Shown here: positions 37,679-50,500 of the stretch, piece by piece
Layout of the letters: every line of letters begins with the position of its first letter
Numbering within the stretch: position 1 is the stretch's first letter
Source: Magallana gigas
Taxonomy: Eukaryota
Assembly (NCBI RefSeq): GCF_963853765.1
Contig: NC_088859.1
Location: forward strand, 38,998,001 to 39,062,000
Direction of reading: 5' to 3'
DNA: 64,000 bases
Notes under the pieces: generated by a model
Seen by the model: only the letters and a program-made list of their open reading frames with translations
What the model was told of the DNA's origin: nothing
The model's database searches: none
Made by a program: the position numbers and the translations under genes

Positions 37679-38842
37679 TTACTTTTGGAAATTCTTCTTA
37701 AAGAGTTCAACAGCTTTGTATCTGTGTGAAATAGTGTTTTTTGTTTCTTTTGGCATCTCTGCATAGGTCTGTTTAAAACCATCAGGTTGAAAGCATGGGT
37801 CCCAGCCAAAATCATTGGGTCCCCTGGGCGCCACAATCTCCCCAGGGGTTTTCCCACAGAATAATTTCACCTCAGAGTCTTTTTCACCTGAGCTGTAGGC
37901 TAAAATACACATTGCTGTAGCTGACTTATCCTCGAAGCCACTAAGCATCTTGTGTAGACCTGTAAAATATTCCAGTCATTAGAAAAACAAAACTGTTTAA
38001 AAAAACAAATTAAATTGTTGTGAGGAAGTTTAAAAGCAAATTAAATAAAGTTCTGTGTTAGAAACCTACCAACTGATGAACGTGTGCATCACTACATACT
38101 TTGTAGTCCCACTCATATTGTGAAAAAAGTGCATCTTGACTAACAAAGATGGCAAAAAGCATTGAATGAATTTTTTATCAATAAACACTGACAAAGTCAG
38201 AAGTCTGATATTATCAAGAGAAACGGATATTTTTTGGCAAGCTAGTACATATACCTTCTGGTCCTAGCTTTTTAAGGAACCATTTGATGTAGGGACCCGG
38301 GAGTCCACCTAAAGCATTGAAGCAGAGACTGGTATCCTCGGTCACTACTGGACACTTCAACCGCTCGGCCGCCAGCTTACATTTCTCTGTGGCCACTTCC
38401 TCGGGTTCTCCTTGAAATTCCGGCAAGTCAACATCGACATTAGTGATCTGAACAGGATTTAAAAAATAAAGTTTATTAACAATCCTAATTTAAAAAAAAA
38501 ATGTTATGTTAGTTCAGTAAAAGACACTAGCTTTGCAAAAAATTCTACACTGTATAATACTCATTTCTTAAATAAGAAACCTTTACATTTTTATCTTCAA
38601 GAAATAATTTCTATTATTTCATTTAGAAACTCTGAAGGATCACCTTTTAATGCAAAATAAAAACTCAAGAATAAAAAAACCCCAATTATAACACATTAAG
38701 TAGTCTGTACAGATGGAAAAGAAGATAAATTTTCAGTTTCAATTACCTTGTAAGGAAAGTCTGGTCCTAGTATTTGCATGAATTCCTTTAGTTTATTTTT
38801 ATTCCCTGTACATAGAACAATTTCTTTTAACTCTTCCTGCAT
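37679..38842 (-). CDS. ITPA: Inosine triphosphate pyrophosphatase (Ham1 family), 189 aa
   Basis: Exons 38842-38747, 38447-38255 and 37959-37679. Motifs [48 protein letters not shown] and ISHR. Confidence 0.96.
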
Positions 38843-42269: not shown

Positions 42270-45200
42270 ATGTCCAGGCACCGTAACGTACGGACAATGA
42301 ACTATGAGGATGGTATGTGGTCAAGTCTTTAAAATTGTTACATGTATGATACGATACCACTTAACGTTACTAAATGTGTTACTGCGACTGTTTGTCGAGC
42401 TGTAAAATGTTGTTTTAAAAACCACTCAAATTTTCATGAAATTGTAATTAACGGGTACACTACAACTTGCCCACTTGTTCACATGTACCCAACAGACCGA
42501 TTGGCAGTTTCATGCCTCAATGTCGATTTACCCAAAAGGTGAACAACCCCTATGTTATTATATAGGTTGGGACCAATCGCCCAAATGGGATATAATAACC
42601 CAAATGGGATATAAATTTTAAGTGCAAAAAATAAACTTTTTTGATATAAATCTGCATTAGAATAGATGTAATGCAACAACTTTTGGTAAACAACTTTTTC
42701 TGTTACGGAGATCGATCCCTCAGTATATCCAAAACTTCTTGGGGATCAATCTTACAAACTGTAGACACATAGAAAAACTTCTTATTGAAAAATTGTTGCA
42801 TTTGATACATATTAATGCAGATTTAAATCAAAAATTTAGAAACTAATTTTTTTTTATTTTTTGCACTTATGTCCCATTTGGGCTATTATAACCCAAACGG
42901 GCTATTATATCCCATTTGGGTGATTGGTCCCAACCTGTTATACATGTGGTCAGGGCATTATATAGAATTGTAAGCAACAGTTACTGTTTTATAATTCTTT
43001 GTCAGGTAGCTGTACTATTGAATTCTTTAATTATACTACAGTCTGTTCCAGGTTACTGTTTCAGTCGCTTTTTGACTATAATTATAACAAAAATACACTT
43101 AGTACGTAATTTTTGTGATGAGAAACTATCATATGCGAGAGTAAATCCTTACTGAGATTTATGATGGGAAATGTTTACATCTTTTTCCATTGGAAAGTAT
43201 TCGGGACACCTTGCACAATTTTCGACTATCATGTCTGTTGCAATGCAAAATCCCTGTAGACTTTCTATTTTTGTTTGTGTATTGAAACCTTTTACTCAGG
43301 TGTCCCTAAAAATGATTGACCTTTGTAGATTATCAGCTGATCTTTCCTTTTTACCTCCACAGATATCATCCATGTATTAAATTGGAATATATATGTACCA
43401 GTACTTGATATGTCAGTATGTCATTGTTATCAACCAGCAAGATGCTTTCAAAGATGGAAATTATATCCATGTATTGCTGTGAAACAAATTTATTAAGGAT
43501 TAATTATAATTTGCATTCCAAACTTACCTACTGCAGATTTATTTTTCAGAATATTTTGATGAAGATGAAGTCTATGGACATTCCTATGATGATAGCTACT
43601 GTGTCTCACCAGCCACAGGTACAGTAGAACATATAAACAAAATATATCAAAATTCAGGAAATTTAAATACATGTACCTTTGTGTAATTGAGAAAAAATTG
43701 AGTTTGTGAAATTTTTTAGCAGTAACATGTTAAAAGAACATTTGTTGCAGCTGCACAATTCACATTTAATCGAGAAAGAGATGTCAACTTGTCGTCCTAC
43801 ATGGAGGAGGGTATTCCCGAGGAGGAGGATGAAAGTGACCCAGAGCCCCTCAGTGAATCTGGGAGGGACAACCTCAAACTTAATGATGTTGAACAAGGTA
43901 AGCTCTGTAACAGCTTTTAAAAGTTCAGTCTGCATTTATTCCAATTTAACCATTGATACTAATGTAATAACAATTAGTTAGGAAACTAGTGAGGTGAATA
44001 AATTGCAAGATTATGCATGTATCTGGTCTATGTAATAAAAATAGCAATGATATGAACACTGTGAAGTTACTGTAAGTAAAGTTATTTTTATTGCAGCTAA
44101 ACTGAATTCCTGTAAAGAGGAAATAGTGAATGTGATAGGCGACACCATTCCAGAGCACATCGTGTCTCAGGCTGTGGTCAAACACCAATACAACATTCAA
44201 GCTGCATTGAATGAACTTCTGAATCAAAGTGGTAAATTAAGCATTTTTCAATTACATTATTGATATCAGCTCAAGAGGATTGTTTGTAAACAGTGATGGT
44301 TGTTTTAGATCTAAAACTTGAAATCATTTGATAATTTTCTGTTATTTTCTGCATTATATGAAAGCAAATGTCAACTCTAAGGGAGAGAAAGTTATGCTGT
44401 AATCTTTTAAGTGTCGTTGTAAAGTTCTGTTTGATTGTTTAAACAAATTTCTTAATACTGTGTGCAAGATCTTACCTACCGGTATATCAAATTCAGTACA
44501 TGTCAAATTTGTATGAATCAGTTTGATGTTACATTTAAATTGAATAACAATTTCATGAAATTTTGAGGCAAAATTATCAAAATTTTCTGGTAGTTATGAA
44601 TTCAATACATTGTATTTATAAATGTTGTATGATACATCGCAACTTTGGTCAGAAGGAGACGTTTCCACCTTTTCATTAACTTCGTCAATTATGTTATATC
44701 ATATAACATTAGTAAAAATTCAATCTATTCCTTAACTGCATATGTTGATATGGATGATTTTTTCTATGTTTACATTTTGTTTTTATTAGAGGCGCCTAAG
44801 CCACAAAGACAACCAAGGCCTGATAGGCGAGCAAACAGACAAGGTGACTATCTCCTCTCTGTAGACTCCATTAAATGATAAAAAATAGTACCGGTATCTT
44901 AAAAAGTGAATTAAATTTAAGTAACTTTATTTGGTATTATTCTCAGTAGTTGTTCTCCCGCACCTTTTTTCATCGCTTAACATTTTGCCCTCCTTTTTTT
45001 TCATGACCTCTCAACCTGTTGGTGATTGGCTGCATGTGTTGTTCTGCTTTCTGTCATCTCTTTGTTGAAAATGATGGTATTTTGCTGAAATATTTGGCGA
45101 TGGTAAGGTAAGATGAAGATGATGACTTTGATAGTTTTTTAGAATCATTAGAAGCTGATGATGGTGACACTAGCATATTTTCAAACTTAACTAAAATGTC

Positions 45201-47497
45201 ACCCAAAATTTTACATTTTGGCTCATCGCAGAATGTTGTTGAGAATAATTTGAAAACTGTAGAAACATTATCTCCCGAGAAATCAAACTCCACCGCGAAT
45301 GATTTTTGTGAACCCGCCAGACCATCATCCCAGTTAGCAAAAAAACATGAGGGAGCTCCACAGACACATAAAGGTCTGTTCCAAGGAGAGAGTACAGGTG
45401 AAAACAAGTCAAGAATATCACTTGCTCAATTAGCAGCTAAACGGAAACCATCATCATCTCTGGCACAACTGGCATTAGCTAAGAAAGGAGATTCTCTTGC
45501 TCAAATAACATCAGGACAGCAAAGTCAATCTGTAGCTCAGCCTGCAGGACAGAAGGTGTCTGTCTTAGATTCTGGACTTAAAGTTTTACCTCTAGCACAG
45601 CTAGCCAGTAAACACAAAGTTGGTACAAGTGTTGAAGAGAAGAAACCATCTTTAGCATTACTAGCAGCAAAACAGATGGAAACTTCTGAAGGAACCATGA
45701 TATCAAAATCCTCAGGAGTAAGTCTTGCTGATCTGGCAGCAAAAGAGACCAAAAACCAATCCATTCTAGGGAAGAAAGGAGCATCTTTAACACAATTATT
45801 AAACACCTCTAAAGAACTTCATCTGGAGAAATCCCCTAAGACATCTTTAGCACAACTAGCACAAAAACACAAACAAACATCCAATATAACTGCGACTGTG
45901 AACGAAAAATTTTCAAAGGAAAAATCTCTTGCTCAGTTGGCCCTGAAGCATAAAAATGAATCATGCACCGAGACTGATGTAGAACAAAAAGGAAAGGGAA
46001 TTTCTCTTGCTCAACTTGCATCAAAACACAAAACACCACTCAGTCAGTCTGGAATATCTCTAATGCAAGTTGCAAAACAAAAGGAAGAAAGAGAAACCGA
46101 AACAAAAAATGTTAGTCTGAGTGACCTAGTCAAACAAAACAAGGAGAAATCAAGTGACAGTGACAATCCACAATCCAAAGATGGACAGCAAGTTACTACA
46201 GTCAGTCAGCCTTCTGCCCAAGGGTTGTCACTTAGAGATTTAGTCAAAGAAAGGTCAGGCAATGTTTTGAAAGACAAATCAAAGAAAATTAAGCAATTGA
46301 AAGGGAATGATACTCAAACTGTAGACAGTAGGGAAGATTCTGATGTACTTCATGAAGGAAAAACTGCAGAAGATCTCGTCATTGAAAAGCTCAGTTTAGA
46401 TTTTGATGCTTTGGTAAACATCACAAAAGGGTCGTCTTGTTTTGGAAAAGTTATTTGTGGAAGGTTTGGAGCATTTAAAAATAAACTAAAAAATAATGAT
46501 TCCCCATCTCAGGGGCCATTTTCATATGCCAAACAAAAACAAATCACTTGTCATCATTCCCCAGAGCATCAGGTGAAATTAGTGCCATTTGATTTCTCAA
46601 CACCCTCCCCAGATGATATTATCAAAGAGAAGCAGAAGAGAGCATTCACACGCCCAAAAGAGAGAAATGATTCCAAATGAAAAAAGTTTCCTCTCAGGAA
46701 ATGAACTTTCTTCCTCCCATTTGTTTTTTGAATGATAAAAGCTTAGGAAATTATTAAATAAATTTATGAAAACATGATTAATGAATAAGGCATAATGTTT
46801 TTGGCAATAATGATGAACAATTTAGAAGTGATACCTGTACTAAATGTAATATAAGGTTGATCAAATCTTAATGCTAAGTCTTGTAAGAAATATATTAATG
46901 CAAACTATATGTTATTATGTATGAAGATGGTTTTTCTGATCACCAGAGTAAAAGTAATGAATTCAATCTCAAGATAAATTAGATAATAGCGATGTATATT
47001 TTGTAAATACTTTAAAGAGCATTCAACTATTTTTTGTAATTTTTAGAATTATACATACTTCATATTTCTCATGTTTTCATTGTTTTTATGTAATGTATTT
47101 ATAATTCTTTTGATAAATAAAGGCAGCTTTCATGTCCTGTTTTATGTAAATTCTTTGATTTGAGAGGAAGTATTTTAATGATTTAAGTATAATTTATCAT
47201 GGTAACAAAAATTAAATTCTACAAAAGTTCATAGTTTAGAGTGTTTCAGGGAAGTGTTTAATTACATGCACTGAGAGTTTCTCAATTTATAACCATAGAT
47301 TATTTGTTACATAATTTTTTTTTTATTAAGTTTTGAAGTAGTGCAACAAGTACTTGACTATTGCTTGAAAAAAACTATCAATTATTGACGAAGTTAATCC
47401 AAGTAAAATTGCACCCCAAGCTATTATATAACTTACATCCCCCCCCCCCAAAAAAAAGTGTCCTTTGCATATTATCATTTTTAGCTCACTTGAGCCA

Positions 47498-47529
<32 letters not shown>

Positions 47530-47545
47530 GTCCGTTGTCTGTCGG

Positions 47546-47591
<46 letters not shown>

Positions 47592-50500
47592 AAGAACCAC
47601 TGGGCAGATTTCAACCAAATTTGGCACACAGTACCACTAGGTGAAGGGGATTCAAGTTTGAGTTTGTTCAAATGAAGGGCCACGCCCTCTTTAAAGGGGA
47701 GATAATTGAGAATTATTGAAAATTTGATGGTATTTTTCAAAATCTTCTTCTCAAAAACTATTCGGCCTGAAAAGCTTAAACTTGTATGGAGGCATCCTCA
47801 GGTAGTGTAGATTCAAGTTTGTTCAAAGCATGGTCCCCGGGGGTAGGAAGGGGCCACAAGAGGGGGATCAAGTTTTACATAGGAATATATAGAGAAAATC
47901 TTTAAAAATCTTCTTCTAAAAAACTATTAGGCCAGGAAAGCTCAAATTAAAATGGAACCATCCTCAGTTAGTGTAGATTCAAGTTTGTTCAAATCATGGT
48001 CCCTGTGGGTAGGGTGGGGCCACAAGAGGGGGATCAAGTTTTACATAGGAATATATAGAGAAAATCTTTAAAAATCTTCTTCTCAAAAAACTATTAGGCC
48101 AGGAAAGCTCAATTTGGCGTGTAACCATCCTCAGATAATGTAGATTCAAGTTTATTCAAATCATGGTCCCTGGGGGTAGGGTGGGGCCATAATGGGGGAT
48201 GAATTTTTATATATAGAGAAAATCTTTAAAAATATTCTTCTCAAAACTATTAGGCCAGGAAGCACAAATTTGAGTGGAAGCATCCCCAGATCGTATAGAT
48301 TCAAGTTTGTTTAAATAATAGTCCAGGGGTAGGGTGAGGCCACAATGGGGGATGAATTTTTACATAGGAATATATAGAGAAAATCTTTAAAAATCTTCTT
48401 TATAAAGACTACTTGTCCAGAAAAGCTTAAACTTGTGTAGAGGCATCCTCGGGTAGTGTATATTCAAGTTTGCAAAATCACAGTCCCTAGTGGTAGGGCG
48501 GGGCCGTGATGGCGGTTTGAATTTTTACATAGGATTATATAGAGAAAATCTTTAAAAATATTCTGGGAAAGTTTTCGGTTCAAAACTCAGAACTTAGTGT
48601 GAAAGCACAGGTTATGCAGATTTAAGTTTGATGAAACCATGATTCCCTAGGGGCCACGAAATGGGGGGGTGGGGGGGATACATAGGAATAGAGACAAATC
48701 TTCTTACAGGTACAACAACAAAAGGGGCTTGGTATTTACCCCCAAAAAAGAGGTGGATAAAAATTGGCAGATTTTAATTTTTTTTTAGCAAGATCTACTG
48801 TACCTAGTTGTCAAGATATTTTGATACTGTGATGCTAATTTGATCAGAATTAAGGCAATTGTTGCTCAGCTGAGTGATGTGGCCCCTGGGCCTCTTGTTC
48901 TTTATTACTTCTAATTATTCTGCATAAGTGTATCAATGCTCCCTTGGAGACTGTTGAGGCTGAGTGACCTTTTCTATGATGGAAAACATATTTTTTCAGG
49001 ATATTGTATACAGGGTTATTTTGAATCAGCAATTGTTTGCTGATTTTTTTCAGAAAATCAATTTGAATGGTAATTTTGGCACTCATTTTTGTCTTATTAA
49101 TTTGTTGTGGTCACTAAAGGTAAGTAGAAGTGTTGGTGTGTAATTTTGGATATTTTTTAAATGTTGTGTTCATATAAGGGTTAGTTCATAGTAAGAACAA
49201 TTGATACATAAAAAAGAATTGTCCTATTTTTATTTTTCAATCAGAGTTTGCACCTGTTCAGCCCACTGTTCAATTAAAAACTCCAGTCAAGAAAAATACA
49301 ACCTCGGACTTAGCCCAAGCTACCTCTGCCACCTCACAAATAAAACTGGAAACCTCAAATCAGACTGTTAAATCTGCAAATAACTCAGAAACTGTGTTCG
49401 GTACTGAGAAGAATACTGTGAAAGACTTGCGCACAAAGGCAGGGAATCTAAATGCAAACAATGAAGTGGATGTCACAGACAGTGCAGTGTTAAATGATTC
49501 CAAACTTCAGGCAGTGAATTCTGAAATAGACCTAGTCGGAGACCTTGTTGGTAGGGACTTAGACACTCCAAGTAAATCATCTAGCAGCAGTGTTCCAGCA
49601 ACTCCCAAAAGTACTTCAAAGTAAGTCAGAACGATGGGATTGTATGGTACTGTTAAAGATACATGTACGTCTAAATCGTGTAGTAATTATATTACTAGCC
49701 ATATTGTGTCACAGAAATTTATTAAATTATTTAAAATTATATATTTATATGGTAATTATGTTCAAGTCTAAAGAATAATTATTGATACGATCTGAGTGAA
49801 ATATATAGAGTATAGTATTTCCTTTGATTGTGAAAATCATTGGAAGAGATAAATTGATATTGAGCAAGCTTTAGCATGCAAACCATAAAAGATCTGCAGT
49901 AGCATATGTACAACAAATAGATTCATCTTTATACTCAGAGATTCTTTGTGTTTATTTTATAGTTTATACAAAAAAATATTGAGATATATTGGCTTTCATT
50001 TGCATTTCTACATTCTTTAGAGTAAAACAAGACAAAGCCAAACTAAAGGAAGAATATGAAAGAAGAAAAACAGGCAAAGATCTTCTGAACTTGGTTGTCA
50101 TTGGTAAGTAGAAATGTCAACATTACTAGGTAGGTTATCTGTAGAAAACCATGCCTTAGATCATACACAGAATAGTGTATGATTCTTTCACCAGCATTGT
50201 CAGCTGGCAAATTCAAGACTGGGTGAATTCAAAACAATATTTAAGTAACTATGTTAATTAAAAAGAGAATCAATTTCTAACTGTGTGTGGGAGAAATCAA
50301 GACGTTATAAAACTGTTTGCAAGGGCGAAAAAACACAGGCTGAAATAACCCGTTACAGTAGTAGTATTAAACCATATCAGTAAGATCAGATAGTACCAAT
50401 AAATCTACCAATAAATTTCACAGGTCATGTGGATGCTGGTAAGAGTACATTGATGGGGCACCTGTTGTATCAGATGGGTGTGGTCAACAAGAGAGCCATG

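What the first reader, a model, noticed from the sequence alone, without database searches (positions are those of the whole stretch)
45113..46680. Hidden Ski7: a 1.57-kb alternative terminal exon turns HBS1L into an exosome adaptor
The exon is in frame with exon 5, ends the protein before the GTPase domain and has its own AATAAA signals. It carries [21 protein letters not shown], matching the exosome-binding PFDFxxxSPDDIVKxNQ motif of human HBS1LV3, and SSCFGKVIC, matching the remembered PSxFxxxL-type Ski7 motif. One locus therefore encodes both the Pelota-partner GTPase and the SKI-exosome bridge. This design is established in human, plants and many fungi. I know of no specific description in a bivalve, and the long ORF could easily be misannotated as a separate gene.
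Basis: partly seen in the sequence, partly recalled or inferred. Interest (0 to 1): 0.72.

Follow-up and report, generated by a model that had tools for sequence, protein, structure and literature searches.

The report
Oyster HBS1L alternative exon encoding SKI7
The oyster HBS1L gene carries the expected alternative last exon that makes a SKI7-type exosome adaptor instead of the ribosome-rescue GTPase; this design was already reported for mollusks, but its splice acceptor holds an oddly conserved 5'-splice-site-like motif that may act as the isoform switch.

Summary
Window 45113-46680 (+) is an open 522-codon exon. It has an AG acceptor at 45111-12, is in phase with exon 5 (44790-44843), stops before the GTPase exons, and is followed by AATAAA at 46757 and 47116.

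A profile of the last ~100 residues hits human HBS1L isoform 3/SKI7 (PDB 9g8m chain E, E=2.6e-20) across all exosome-binding patches. It also hits yeast Ski7 (E~2e-3).

An RNA contig joins 44843 to 45113. Another run shows the canonical 44843/49245 join. RefSeq models in Saccostrea, Ostrea and Haliotis use the same junction. dN/dS is 0.19 over the C-terminal motifs.

The novelty claim fails. Brunkard & Baker 2018 already list mollusk SKI7-like isoforms, including a scallop.

One feature appears to be new. The acceptor reads AAG|GTAAG|R, usually GTAAGGTAAG, after a 65-230 nt AG-free tract. This holds in 12 lineages, including oysters, abalone and a shark-like vertebrate, whose exon proteins are only 25-45% identical. 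This matches the recursive or dual-specific splice-site consensus. It may be the HBS1/SKI7 switch, but that is untested.

The parts
42270..42311 (+). HBS1L exon 1 coding part ([14 protein letters not shown]); shared by both isoforms
   Evidence: tblastn with Saccostrea/Ostrea isoforms. The X1 RNA contig joins it to 43549 (loose end).
43549..43618 (+). exon 2
   Evidence: RNA joints with GT..AG ends; tblastn.
43751..43897 (+). exon 3
   Evidence: RNA joints in four runs.
44097..44231 (+). exon 4, HBS1_N (UBA-like) domain
   Evidence: Pfam PF08938, E=8e-5 on the ORF piece; RNA joints.
44790..44843 (+). exon 5 ([17 protein letters not shown] + first base of a split codon); the last exon common to both isoforms
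44844..45112 (+). intron 5a (269 nt). An AG-free tract of 156 nt (44950-45105) precedes the first AG of the motif.
45002..45112 (+). ultraconserved intronic block. It contains UGCAUG (45031-36), a pyrimidine tract (about 45037-45067) and the terminal GTAAGGTAAG.
   Evidence: 92.8% identical to Crassostrea virginica-type contigs L004/L005. The rest of the intron is ~50% identical and exon 5 is 79.6%. No significant RNA fold (z=-0.11).
45103..45112 (+). GTAAGGTAAG: two overlapping 5'ss-like pentamers that contain AG#1 (45106-07) and AG#2 (45111-12, the acceptor used for SKI7). The core AAG|GTAAG|R matches the recursive/dual-specific splice-site consensus.
   Evidence: Invariant core at the orthologous acceptor in 12 lineages. 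The 10-mer is unique in the 64-kb window.
45113..46680 (+). alternative terminal coding exon (SKI7/HBS1L3-type), 522 codons including the stop
45412..46251 (+). array of SLAQLAxKHK-type amphipathic motifs: 11 strict copies against 0.83 +/- 0.89 expected in shuffles. The last copies (46051-46083 and 46108-46140) align to human SKI7 helices H1 and H2; H2 is the SKI3-docking helix.
46420..46473 (+). SKI7-like motif / patch 1 ([18 protein letters not shown]), aligned to human 555-572, the helix in the RRP43-MTR3 cleft
   Evidence: In the reference allele, Gly sits at the position of human R559 and Ser at the conserved Pro. RNA runs mostly carry C at 46432, which gives Pro.
46513..46542 (+). patch 2 ([10 protein letters not shown]), aligned to the human 582-593 loop
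46567..46656 (+). patch 3 / Patch-4-like motif plus C-terminal helix ([14 protein letters not shown], then [16 protein letters not shown]). Aligned to human 602-616 (CSL4 contact) and 617-632 (SKI2 RecA1 contact).
46681..47140 (+). 3' UTR with poly(A) signals at 46757 and 47116
   Evidence: PolyA-RNA depth falls after ~46850. RNA contigs run to ~47020 and continue at lower depth. The block 47062-47148 is conserved in L004/L005.
49245..49620 (+). canonical exon 6, the first exon specific to the GTPase isoform
   Evidence: The X1 loose end behind 44843 equals its first 28 nt. Magallana gigas 732-aa HBS1L (P0094) reads RANRQ-EFAPVQ.
50424..53782 (+). GTPase, domain 2 and domain 3 exons of canonical HBS1L
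   Evidence: Pfam GTP_EFTU, GTP_EFTU_D2, GTP_EFTU_D3 and GTP-eEF1A_C.

Best explanation
The locus is the oyster HBS1L gene. Exons 1-5 encode the shared N-terminal domain.

If exon 5 is spliced to the distal acceptor at 49245, the mRNA encodes the canonical Pelota-partner GTPase of about 732 aa.

If exon 5 is spliced to the proximal acceptor at 45113, transcription ends at the exon's own poly(A) sites. The mRNA then encodes a protein of about 650 aa without a GTPase. This protein is the ortholog of human HBS1L isoform 3 (SKI7).

By homology to the solved human complex, its last ~80 residues would wrap around the cytoplasmic exosome. Patch 1 would sit in the RRP43-MTR3 cleft, patch 2 on RRP43/RRP45 and the PFDF patch on CSL4. 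The terminal helix would touch SKI2. An upstream SLSDLV-type helix would dock on SKI3. The protein would thereby bridge the SKI helicase complex and the exosome for 3'-5' decay of ribosome-bound mRNA.

Shown here: the exon structure, the reading frame, both splice junctions in RNA, purifying selection, and significant sequence homology to the structurally defined binding elements. Inferred: the binding and the function.

The SKI7 form appears to be the minority product, roughly 10-30% by depth.
For: Frame, acceptor, stop and poly(A) signals.

Gene identity: HBS1_N and GTP_EFTU exons on either side, and 731-732-aa canonical proteins in Magallana.

Homology: PDB phmmer hit to 9g8m_E at E=3e-7. 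The profile hit is E=2.6e-20 over chain 181-268, which corresponds to human residues 545-632 (SKI7EXO). Four yeast Ski7 chains hit at E=0.0015-0.007. Mapping to the human patches uses Kogel et al. 2024 and Kalisiak et al. 2017.

RNA evidence:
- An X11 contig joins 44843/45113 with GT..AG ends and continues to 47011.
- The X1 contig of exons 2-5 continues into the first 28 nt of exon 6.
- Stranded polyA reads lie on the exon in the gene's orientation.
- Contig depth is 22 for the exon against 96-129 for exons 2-5.

Orthologs: RefSeq isoforms with the same exon-5 junction exist in Saccostrea, Ostrea and Haliotis.

Motif conservation was seen in 24 sequences. dN/dS is 0.41 for the exon and 0.19 for the last 96 codons.

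The same nested gene design (N-terminal exons, then the SKI7 exon, then GTPase exons) occurs in unnamed animal contigs L010, L011, L016 and L038.
Against: Only one RNA contig, from one run, spans the 44843/45113 junction, with a 26-nt anchor.

The 1% samples of the two polyA raw-read runs gave no reads over 45072-45367. They therefore neither confirm nor refute the junction.

In run X1 the contig covering the exon reads through the acceptor into the last 108 nt of the intron and starts at 45005. Unspliced or internally initiated RNA therefore also exists.

The reference allele deviates from the metazoan SKI7-like consensus A+PShFAahL at the '+' position (Gly) and the Pro position (Ser). Most RNA reads, however, carry Pro.

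No binding was tested.
Confidence: 0.9

Rival explanations
1. The exon is mainly expressed as a separate transcript that starts inside intron 5, at about 45005. The conserved 111-nt block would then be its promoter or 5' UTR. Translation would begin at Met 45196 and give a 494-aa SKI7-like protein lacking the shared 40S-binding N-terminal domain.
For: The X1 RNA contig runs colinearly from 45005 into the exon, with no coverage of the first 160 nt of the intron. Its 5' end coincides with the start of the oyster-conserved block. A Met near this position is kept in all oysters. A clade of metagenome contigs seems to have a stand-alone short SKI7-like exon starting MIKSTFSR, with no HBS1 exons nearby.
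Against: The X11 contig joins exon 5 to the exon. Four mollusk RefSeq models do the same. The 27 codons before the Met ([16 protein letters not shown]...) are conserved as protein and are in frame with exon 5. Such an mRNA would carry eight or more upstream ATGs. The contig start at 45005 follows a length-polymorphic T-run that would break an assembly.
Confidence: 0.12
2. The exon also, or mainly, serves as a composite internal exon. An internal donor would join its first ~310 codons, the SLAQLA-repeat part, to exon 6. The result would be a long GTPase-containing isoform that lacks the exosome-binding motifs.
For: RefSeq Crassostrea virginica isoform X2 (P0074, 1039 aa) has exactly this structure. 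It enters at the same acceptor and leaves at ...KMSI|KFAPV.... The donor CA|GTAATT is present in L004. A weaker CA|GTCAGT lies at the same codon in the window, at about 46051.
Against: No such joint was listed in the four runs laid. The window's donor is weak. The model is a computational prediction in another species. This isoform would not exclude the SKI7 isoform.
Confidence: 0.15
3. The exon is a non-functional premature-termination trap that only lowers HBS1 output, and its protein has no role.
For: It is the minority isoform. Most of the exon is fast-evolving and low in complexity (43-44% identity between oyster genera).
Against: dN/dS is 0.19 over the C-terminal motifs. 16 alignment columns are invariant in 13 aligned sequences from several phyla. 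Homology to the structurally defined human binding region is highly significant.
Confidence: 0.03

Closest known systems
Human HBS1L isoform 3 (HBS1LV3 / SKI7; Kalisiak et al. 2017 PMC5389692; Kogel et al. 2024 PMC11540850, PDB 9g8m-9g8p)
   Same: It is an alternative terminal exon after the shared N-terminal domain and lacks a GTPase. The C-terminal order is the same: SKI3-docking helix, RxxxFxxxL-type helix, loop, PFDF...SPDDI motif and terminal helix. All of these align to the oyster exon.
   Different: The oyster has a larger array of SLAQLA-type motifs (11 strict copies). It has a 7-residue tail after the position where the human protein ends. It has Lys-Gly-Ser/Pro where human has Ala-Arg-Pro in patch 1. 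Sequence identity outside the last ~100 residues is negligible.
Mollusk SKI7-like isoforms listed by Brunkard & Baker 2018 (PMC6143672): Mizuhopecten yessoensis XP_021367803.1, Aplysia californica XP_005104902.1, Octopus bimaculoides XP_014788281.1. Also RefSeq Saccostrea echinata X2, Ostrea edulis X3, Haliotis X2.
   Same: They are orthologs, with the same exon-5 junction and the same two defining motifs.
   Different: They come from different species. RefSeq names these isoforms 'uncharacterized protein'. No full-length SKI7 isoform of a Magallana/Crassostrea gigas-group oyster appeared in the protein searches.
Yeast Ski7 (PDB 5jea, 5g06, 8qca)
   Same: It has the same bridging role, and a patch-4 motif (NFNRPSPDDIIQ) that the mollusk profile detects. 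It also has N-terminal SLLEQLA-type helices.
   Different: It is a separate gene that arose after whole-genome duplication. It retains a GTPase-like domain, has its binding elements at the N-terminus, and has no RxxxFxxxL-type patch.
Recursive splice sites / ratchet points and dual-specific splice sites (AG|GTAAG; e.g. Duan et al. 2024 PMC10809524; lariat-based RS discovery PMC10156609)
   Same: The acceptor of the SKI7 exon reads AAG|GTAAG. This is a 3' splice site directly followed by a consensus 5' splice site.
   Different: Known recursive sites were mostly described in long introns, and none that I could find was described at an alternative terminal exon. Here the motif sits in a 160-600 nt intron and has a second AG 5 nt downstream that is the one used for the coding isoform. 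Use as a recursive site was not shown.

Membership tests
SKI7 / HBS1L isoform 3 (metazoan type) | Produced from the HBS1 locus by alternative splicing, sharing the N-terminal domain | tested here: met
   The frame is in phase with exon 5. An RNA contig joins 44843/45113, and the canonical junction is also seen. Orthologous RefSeq models agree.
SKI7 / HBS1L isoform 3 (metazoan type) | Patch-4-like motif PFDFxxxSPDDIVKxNQ (metazoan consensus IaPF[D/R]F[K/D][S/T]aSPDDIV+A) | tested here: met
   [19 protein letters not shown] lies at 46579-46635. These columns are invariant in alignment A1. The region aligns to human 609-625.
SKI7 / HBS1L isoform 3 (metazoan type) | SKI7-like motif (human R559xxxF563xxxL567; metazoan consensus A+PShFAahL) | tested here: inconclusive
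   F and the hydrophobic position (Ile) are kept, as are the following Cys and Arg. In the reference allele the '+' position is Gly (Lys lies one residue earlier) and the Pro is Ser. Close relatives have KGP or KRP, and RNA reads carry Pro.
SKI7 / HBS1L isoform 3 (metazoan type) | No translational GTPase domain (metazoan form) | tested here: met
   The stop is at 46678-80. Pfam finds no domain in the exon product. The GTPase exons lie downstream from 50424.
SKI7 / HBS1L isoform 3 (metazoan type) | SKI3-docking helix upstream of the exosome-binding region (human 451-464, L454/I458) | tested here: inconclusive
   phmmer aligns [11 protein letters not shown] (46108-46140) to human NLSLSELIAE, with Leu/Val at the two key positions. 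This is sequence similarity only.
SKI7 / HBS1L isoform 3 (metazoan type) | Physical bridging of the exosome core and the SKI2-SKI3-SKI8 complex | not testable with these tools
   No oyster exosome subunit sequence could be obtained in admissible form. The PF10447 search of the genome found nothing, so no complex prediction was run.
Recursive / dual-specific splice site | 3' splice-site AG immediately followed by a consensus 5' splice site (AG|GTAAG) | tested here: met
   AAG|GTAAG lies at 45105-45112. The same core is present at the orthologous acceptor in 12 lineages.
Recursive / dual-specific splice site | Actual two-step use: an exon 5/45108 junction intermediate, or a lariat whose 5' end is at 45108 | not tested
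No such joint was listed.

The most novel reading that the evidence does not exclude
The bilaterian-conserved AAG|GTAAG|R element at the SKI7-exon acceptor is the molecular switch between the two proteins.

The intron before it is short, so it would be spliced long before exon 6 is transcribed. Splicing to the first AG (45107) would leave a regenerated strong 5' splice site: exon 5 ...AAG followed by GTAAGA. That keeps the transcript competent to splice on to the GTPase exons. This would be a zero-length recursive, or dual-specific, site.

Splicing to the second AG, 5 nt downstream (45112), removes that 5' splice site and commits the transcript to the SKI7 terminal exon and its poly(A) sites.

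A variant of the idea is that U1 snRNP bound to the tandem GTAAG masks the acceptor or suppresses the exon's poly(A) sites until it is spliced out.

Either way, a 10-nt element conserved from mollusks to vertebrates would set the HBS1:SKI7 ratio.
Probability: 0.4. Interest if true: 0.72.

Novelty: new member of a known kind. Interest (0 to 1): 0.42.

Why it matters
The exon itself matters mostly for annotation. In oysters the SKI7 isoform is either labelled 'uncharacterized protein' or seemingly missing from protein sets. As a result, the cytoplasmic exosome adaptor of a major aquaculture and model bivalve is easy to overlook or to call as a separate gene.

The more interesting point is regulatory. 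How cells set the ratio between the ribosome-rescue GTPase and the exosome adaptor from one gene is not known. A short cis-element that has remained nearly unchanged since the bilaterian ancestor, and that looks like a recursive splice site, gives a concrete and easily mutated handle on that question in any animal, including human cells.

Tried and rejected
- Pfam on the exon product gave no family. Rfam on the whole window gave no hit.
- The conserved intron/exon boundary (45000-45180) showed no significant RNA structure, z=-0.11. A structural switch is therefore not supported.
- Logan/ENA contigs carrying the exon's ORF in relatives (L001-L009) turned out to be genomic and colinear with the introns. 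They give no splice evidence. The P0007 look-up found nothing.
- Cluster members carried no names.
- No full-length SKI7 isoform of the gigas-group oysters was found in two protein searches.
- Complex prediction with exosome subunits was not run. The PF10447 (CSL4) search of the genome found no exon-level match, and no admissible mollusk subunit sequence was in hand.
- The polyA raw reads, a 1% sample, did not cover the first 400 nt of the exon, so no raw-read junction count was obtained. The tool states that a dip in depth is no finding.
- No complement of the 10-mer lies nearby, so a looping model is not supported.
- Literature searches for HBS1L with recursive splicing, and for recursive splice sites at alternative last exons, found nothing relevant.
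Full report
OBSERVATION

An AG at 45111-12 precedes an open frame of 522 codons that ends at TGA 46678-80. Exon 5 (44790-44843, [17 protein letters not shown]) ends one base into a codon. G + AT gives Asp, and the frame runs on as [16 protein letters not shown]... An in-frame TAA straddles the acceptor at 45109-11, so the frame can only be entered by splicing.

The next exon at 49245 accepts the same phase, G + AG giving Glu, then FAPVQP.... AATAAA lies at 46757 and 47116, and ATTAAA at 46753 and 47211. The exon is single-copy in the 564-Mb, ten-chromosome genome.

THE GENE

Upstream ORF pieces carry HBS1_N. Downstream pieces carry GTP_EFTU, domain 2 and domain 3. tblastn with oyster RefSeq isoforms places exon 1 (ATG at 42270) to exon 5. 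RNA joints give the exact borders of exons 2-5.

The canonical 731-732-aa HBS1L of Magallana oysters reads ...RANRQ-EFAPVQ..., that is, exon 5 joined to the exon at 49245. The window differs from the Magallana gigas protein at a few residues, so it is that species group or a close relative. I do not name the species.

WHAT THE EXON ENCODES

Pfam sees nothing in the exon product. A phmmer search of PDB sequences hits chain E of 9g8m-9g8p, 'Isoform 2 of HBS1-like protein', at E=3e-7. A profile of the last ~100 residues from 13 animals hits the same chain at E=2.6e-20 over chain residues 181-268. It also hits four yeast Ski7 chains at E=0.0015-0.007.

I derived a chain-to-protein offset of 364. 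It follows from the construct boundaries 369-632 and from L454/I458 in the SKI3-binding helix described by Kogel et al. 2024. With this offset the oyster residues map onto every defined element of human SKI7:
- [18 protein letters not shown] (46420-46473) maps to the patch-1 helix 555-572 in the RRP43-MTR3 cleft.
- [10 protein letters not shown] (46513-46542) maps to the patch-2 loop 582-593.
- [14 protein letters not shown] maps to patch 3, 602-616, on CSL4.
- [16 protein letters not shown] maps to the terminal helix 617-632 that touches SKI2 RecA1.
- Upstream, [11 protein letters not shown] aligns to the human SKI3-docking helix NLSLSELIAE.

In Kalisiak's RxxxFxxxL motif, the Phe and the hydrophobic residue are kept. 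The reference allele, however, has Gly at the Arg position and Ser at the conserved Pro. Close relatives have KGP or KRP. The RNA runs mostly read C at 46432, which restores Pro. The reference haplotype therefore carries a minor allele at a near-invariant position.

TRANSCRIPTION AND SPLICING

Twenty runs hold most of the exon's words. Three of them are on record as RNA. I laid four runs on 43000-47420. The intron further downstream holds a high-copy repeat, so I left it out.

- In run X11, a 1930-nt contig carries 26 nt of exon 5 joined to 45113, with GT..AG ends, and runs to 47011.
- In run X1, the contig of exons 2-5 continues with 28 letters that equal the start of the exon at 49245.

Contig depth is about 22 on the exon against 96-129 on exons 2-5. 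Stranded polyA raw reads lie on 45400-46850 at 1-4x in the gene's orientation, against 7-18x on exon 3. The SKI7 form is thus a minority, very roughly 10-30%.

Three caveats apply:
- The junction rests on one contig.
- The 1% samples of the raw runs had no reads on 45072-45367.
- The X1 contig over the exon reads through the acceptor into the last 108 nt of the intron and begins at 45005. Unspliced or internally started RNA therefore also exists.

CONSERVATION

The exon product finds RefSeq isoforms that combine HBS1_N with this exon in Saccostrea echinata (X2, 692 aa), Ostrea edulis (X3, 680 aa) and two Haliotis species. It also finds a shark HBS1L isoform X4. Their exon-5 junction is the same as the one proposed here.

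The C-terminal ~100 residues align across 24 sequences with invariant PS.(F/I)G..(L/I)C, FS(F/Y)..Q and [16 protein letters not shown]. Between the window and an oyster at dS=0.2, dN/dS is 0.41 for the exon, 0.47 for the repeat-rich part and 0.19 for the last 96 codons.

WHAT IS ALREADY KNOWN

[quoted passage not shown] Their supplementary alignment contains the scallop Mizuhopecten yessoensis isoform X4, Aplysia and Octopus. The design is thus already reported for a bivalve, and the oyster case is a further member.

No full-length SKI7 isoform of the gigas-group oysters appeared in my two protein searches.

A FEATURE THAT MAY BE NEW

The last 111 nt of intron 5a (45002-45112) are 92.8% identical between the window and Crassostrea virginica-type contigs. 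The exon proteins of these two are only 43-44% identical. The rest of the intron is about 50% identical, and even exon 5 is 79.6%. The block holds UGCAUG, a pyrimidine tract and an AG-free spacer. It ends in ATGGTAAGGTAAG, immediately before the exon.

The same ending occurs at the orthologous acceptor in:
- a Haliotis contig, whose ORF is 96% identical to H. cracherodii X2;
- a cartilaginous-fish-like contig, 61% identical to the sevengill shark isoform;
- eight further unnamed animal lineages from ENA and JGI assemblies.

In all, 12 lineages whose exon proteins are 25-45% identical carry it. Ten have the exact GTAAGGTAAG. Two have GGAAGGTAAG or CACAAGGTAAG, so the invariant core is AAG|GTAAG|R. 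TGGC usually lies 4-6 nt upstream. The tract before the first AG is free of AG for 65-230 nt in every lineage.

Where flanks are available, these loci have the nested design: HBS1 N-terminal exons, a 160-600 nt intron, the SKI7 exon, then the GTPase exons. One clade of metagenome contigs lacks the motif. It has a short exon beginning MIKSTFSR behind an ordinary pyrimidine-CAG acceptor, and shows no HBS1 exons within up to 3-4 kb. This fits a stand-alone gene there, although larger introns are not excluded.

AG|GTAAG is the consensus of recursive, or dual-specific, splice sites. All protein models and the X11 contig use the second AG. The first AG would shift the frame and stop after 11 codons, unless the regenerated 5' splice site is used to splice on to exon 6.

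I therefore propose, as a hypothesis only, that the first AG serves recursive removal of the long intron and yields HBS1, while the second AG commits to SKI7. U1 masking of the acceptor, or suppression of the exon's poly(A) sites, is an alternative reading. I found no paper linking HBS1L to recursive splicing. I could not examine the human gene.

OTHER POINTS

The exon carries 11 strict copies of an SLAQLAxKHK-type motif, against 0.83 expected. This agrees with a separate note of this scan. The copies that align to human helices H1 and H2 are the last ones in the array.

RefSeq C. virginica isoform X2 (1039 aa) enters the exon at the same acceptor. It leaves by an internal donor after ~310 codons and continues into the GTPase. 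The exon may therefore also act as a composite internal exon. The window has a weaker GT at the same codon.

VERDICT

The kind is already known, including in bivalves. The exon's acceptor architecture is the part worth following up.

Noticed in passing
window 45103-45112, and loci L003, L004, L006, L010-L014, L016, L018-L020, L022, L024, L026, L038: GTAAGGTAAG (core AAG|GTAAG|R) sits directly at the acceptor of the SKI7-type exon, after a 65-230 nt AG-free tract. It is conserved in 12 lineages, from oysters and abalone to a shark-like vertebrate. It matches the recursive/dual-specific splice-site consensus.
   Followed up: partly
window 45002-45112: A 111-nt intronic block is 92.8% identical between distant oyster genera, which is more conserved than the neighbouring coding exons. 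It includes an RBFOX-type UGCAUG at 45031-36. It shows no significant RNA fold.
   Followed up: partly
window 45412-46251: There are 11 strict copies (13-14 on loose counting) of an SLAQLAxKHK amphipathic motif, against 0.83 expected. There is no DNA-level tandem repeat. Similar arrays occur in Saccostrea (15 copies), Haliotis and unnamed animals. The human SKI3-docking helix is one copy of this motif type.
   Followed up: partly
window 46432 (also 46439): The reference has T (Ser) at the near-invariant Pro of the SKI7-like motif. RNA runs read C (Pro) in 3 of 5 and 2 of 2 reads and in both RNA contigs. A second variant, G>A at 46439, changes Cys to Tyr in some reads.
   Followed up: partly
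window ~46051; L004 ~2740; protein P0074: Crassostrea virginica RefSeq isoform X2 (1039 aa) uses an internal donor inside the SKI7 exon to join its first ~310 codons to the GTPase exons. The window has a weaker GT at the same codon position.
   Followed up: partly
loci L021, L023, L025, L028-L037, L039, L040: A clade of metagenome-derived animal contigs has a short (~270 aa) SKI7-like exon beginning MIKSTFSR behind an ordinary acceptor. It lacks the GTAAG motif, and no HBS1 N-terminal or GTPase exons lie within 3-4 kb. This may be a stand-alone SKI7 gene.
   Followed up: partly
window 47470-48910: A high-copy dispersed element lies in the intron after the SKI7 exon. At least 80 copies were scored, out of 7645 candidates, at ~91% identity. 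It contains a 166-bp tandem array of 5 copies at 47735-48564.
   Followed up: partly
window 42557-42950: A palindromic element of about 385 bp lies in intron 1. It matches many genomic copies in both orientations, which is MITE-like.
   Followed up: no
window 43148-43295: A ~145-nt dispersed repeat (2289 candidate copies) in intron 1 is very abundant in RNA on both strands. Contig depth is 590-650, against ~100 for the gene's exons. The reads come from other copies, at 90-95% likeness.
   Followed up: partly
window 34681-36619 (+) and 37679-38842 (-): The neighbouring genes are an annexin (Pfam Annexin) on the + strand and an ITPase/Ham1-family gene on the - strand. The latter is head to head with HBS1L.
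   Followed up: partly
window 57537-58343 (-): An intronless 268-aa ORF lies downstream of HBS1L and has no Pfam match.
   Followed up: no
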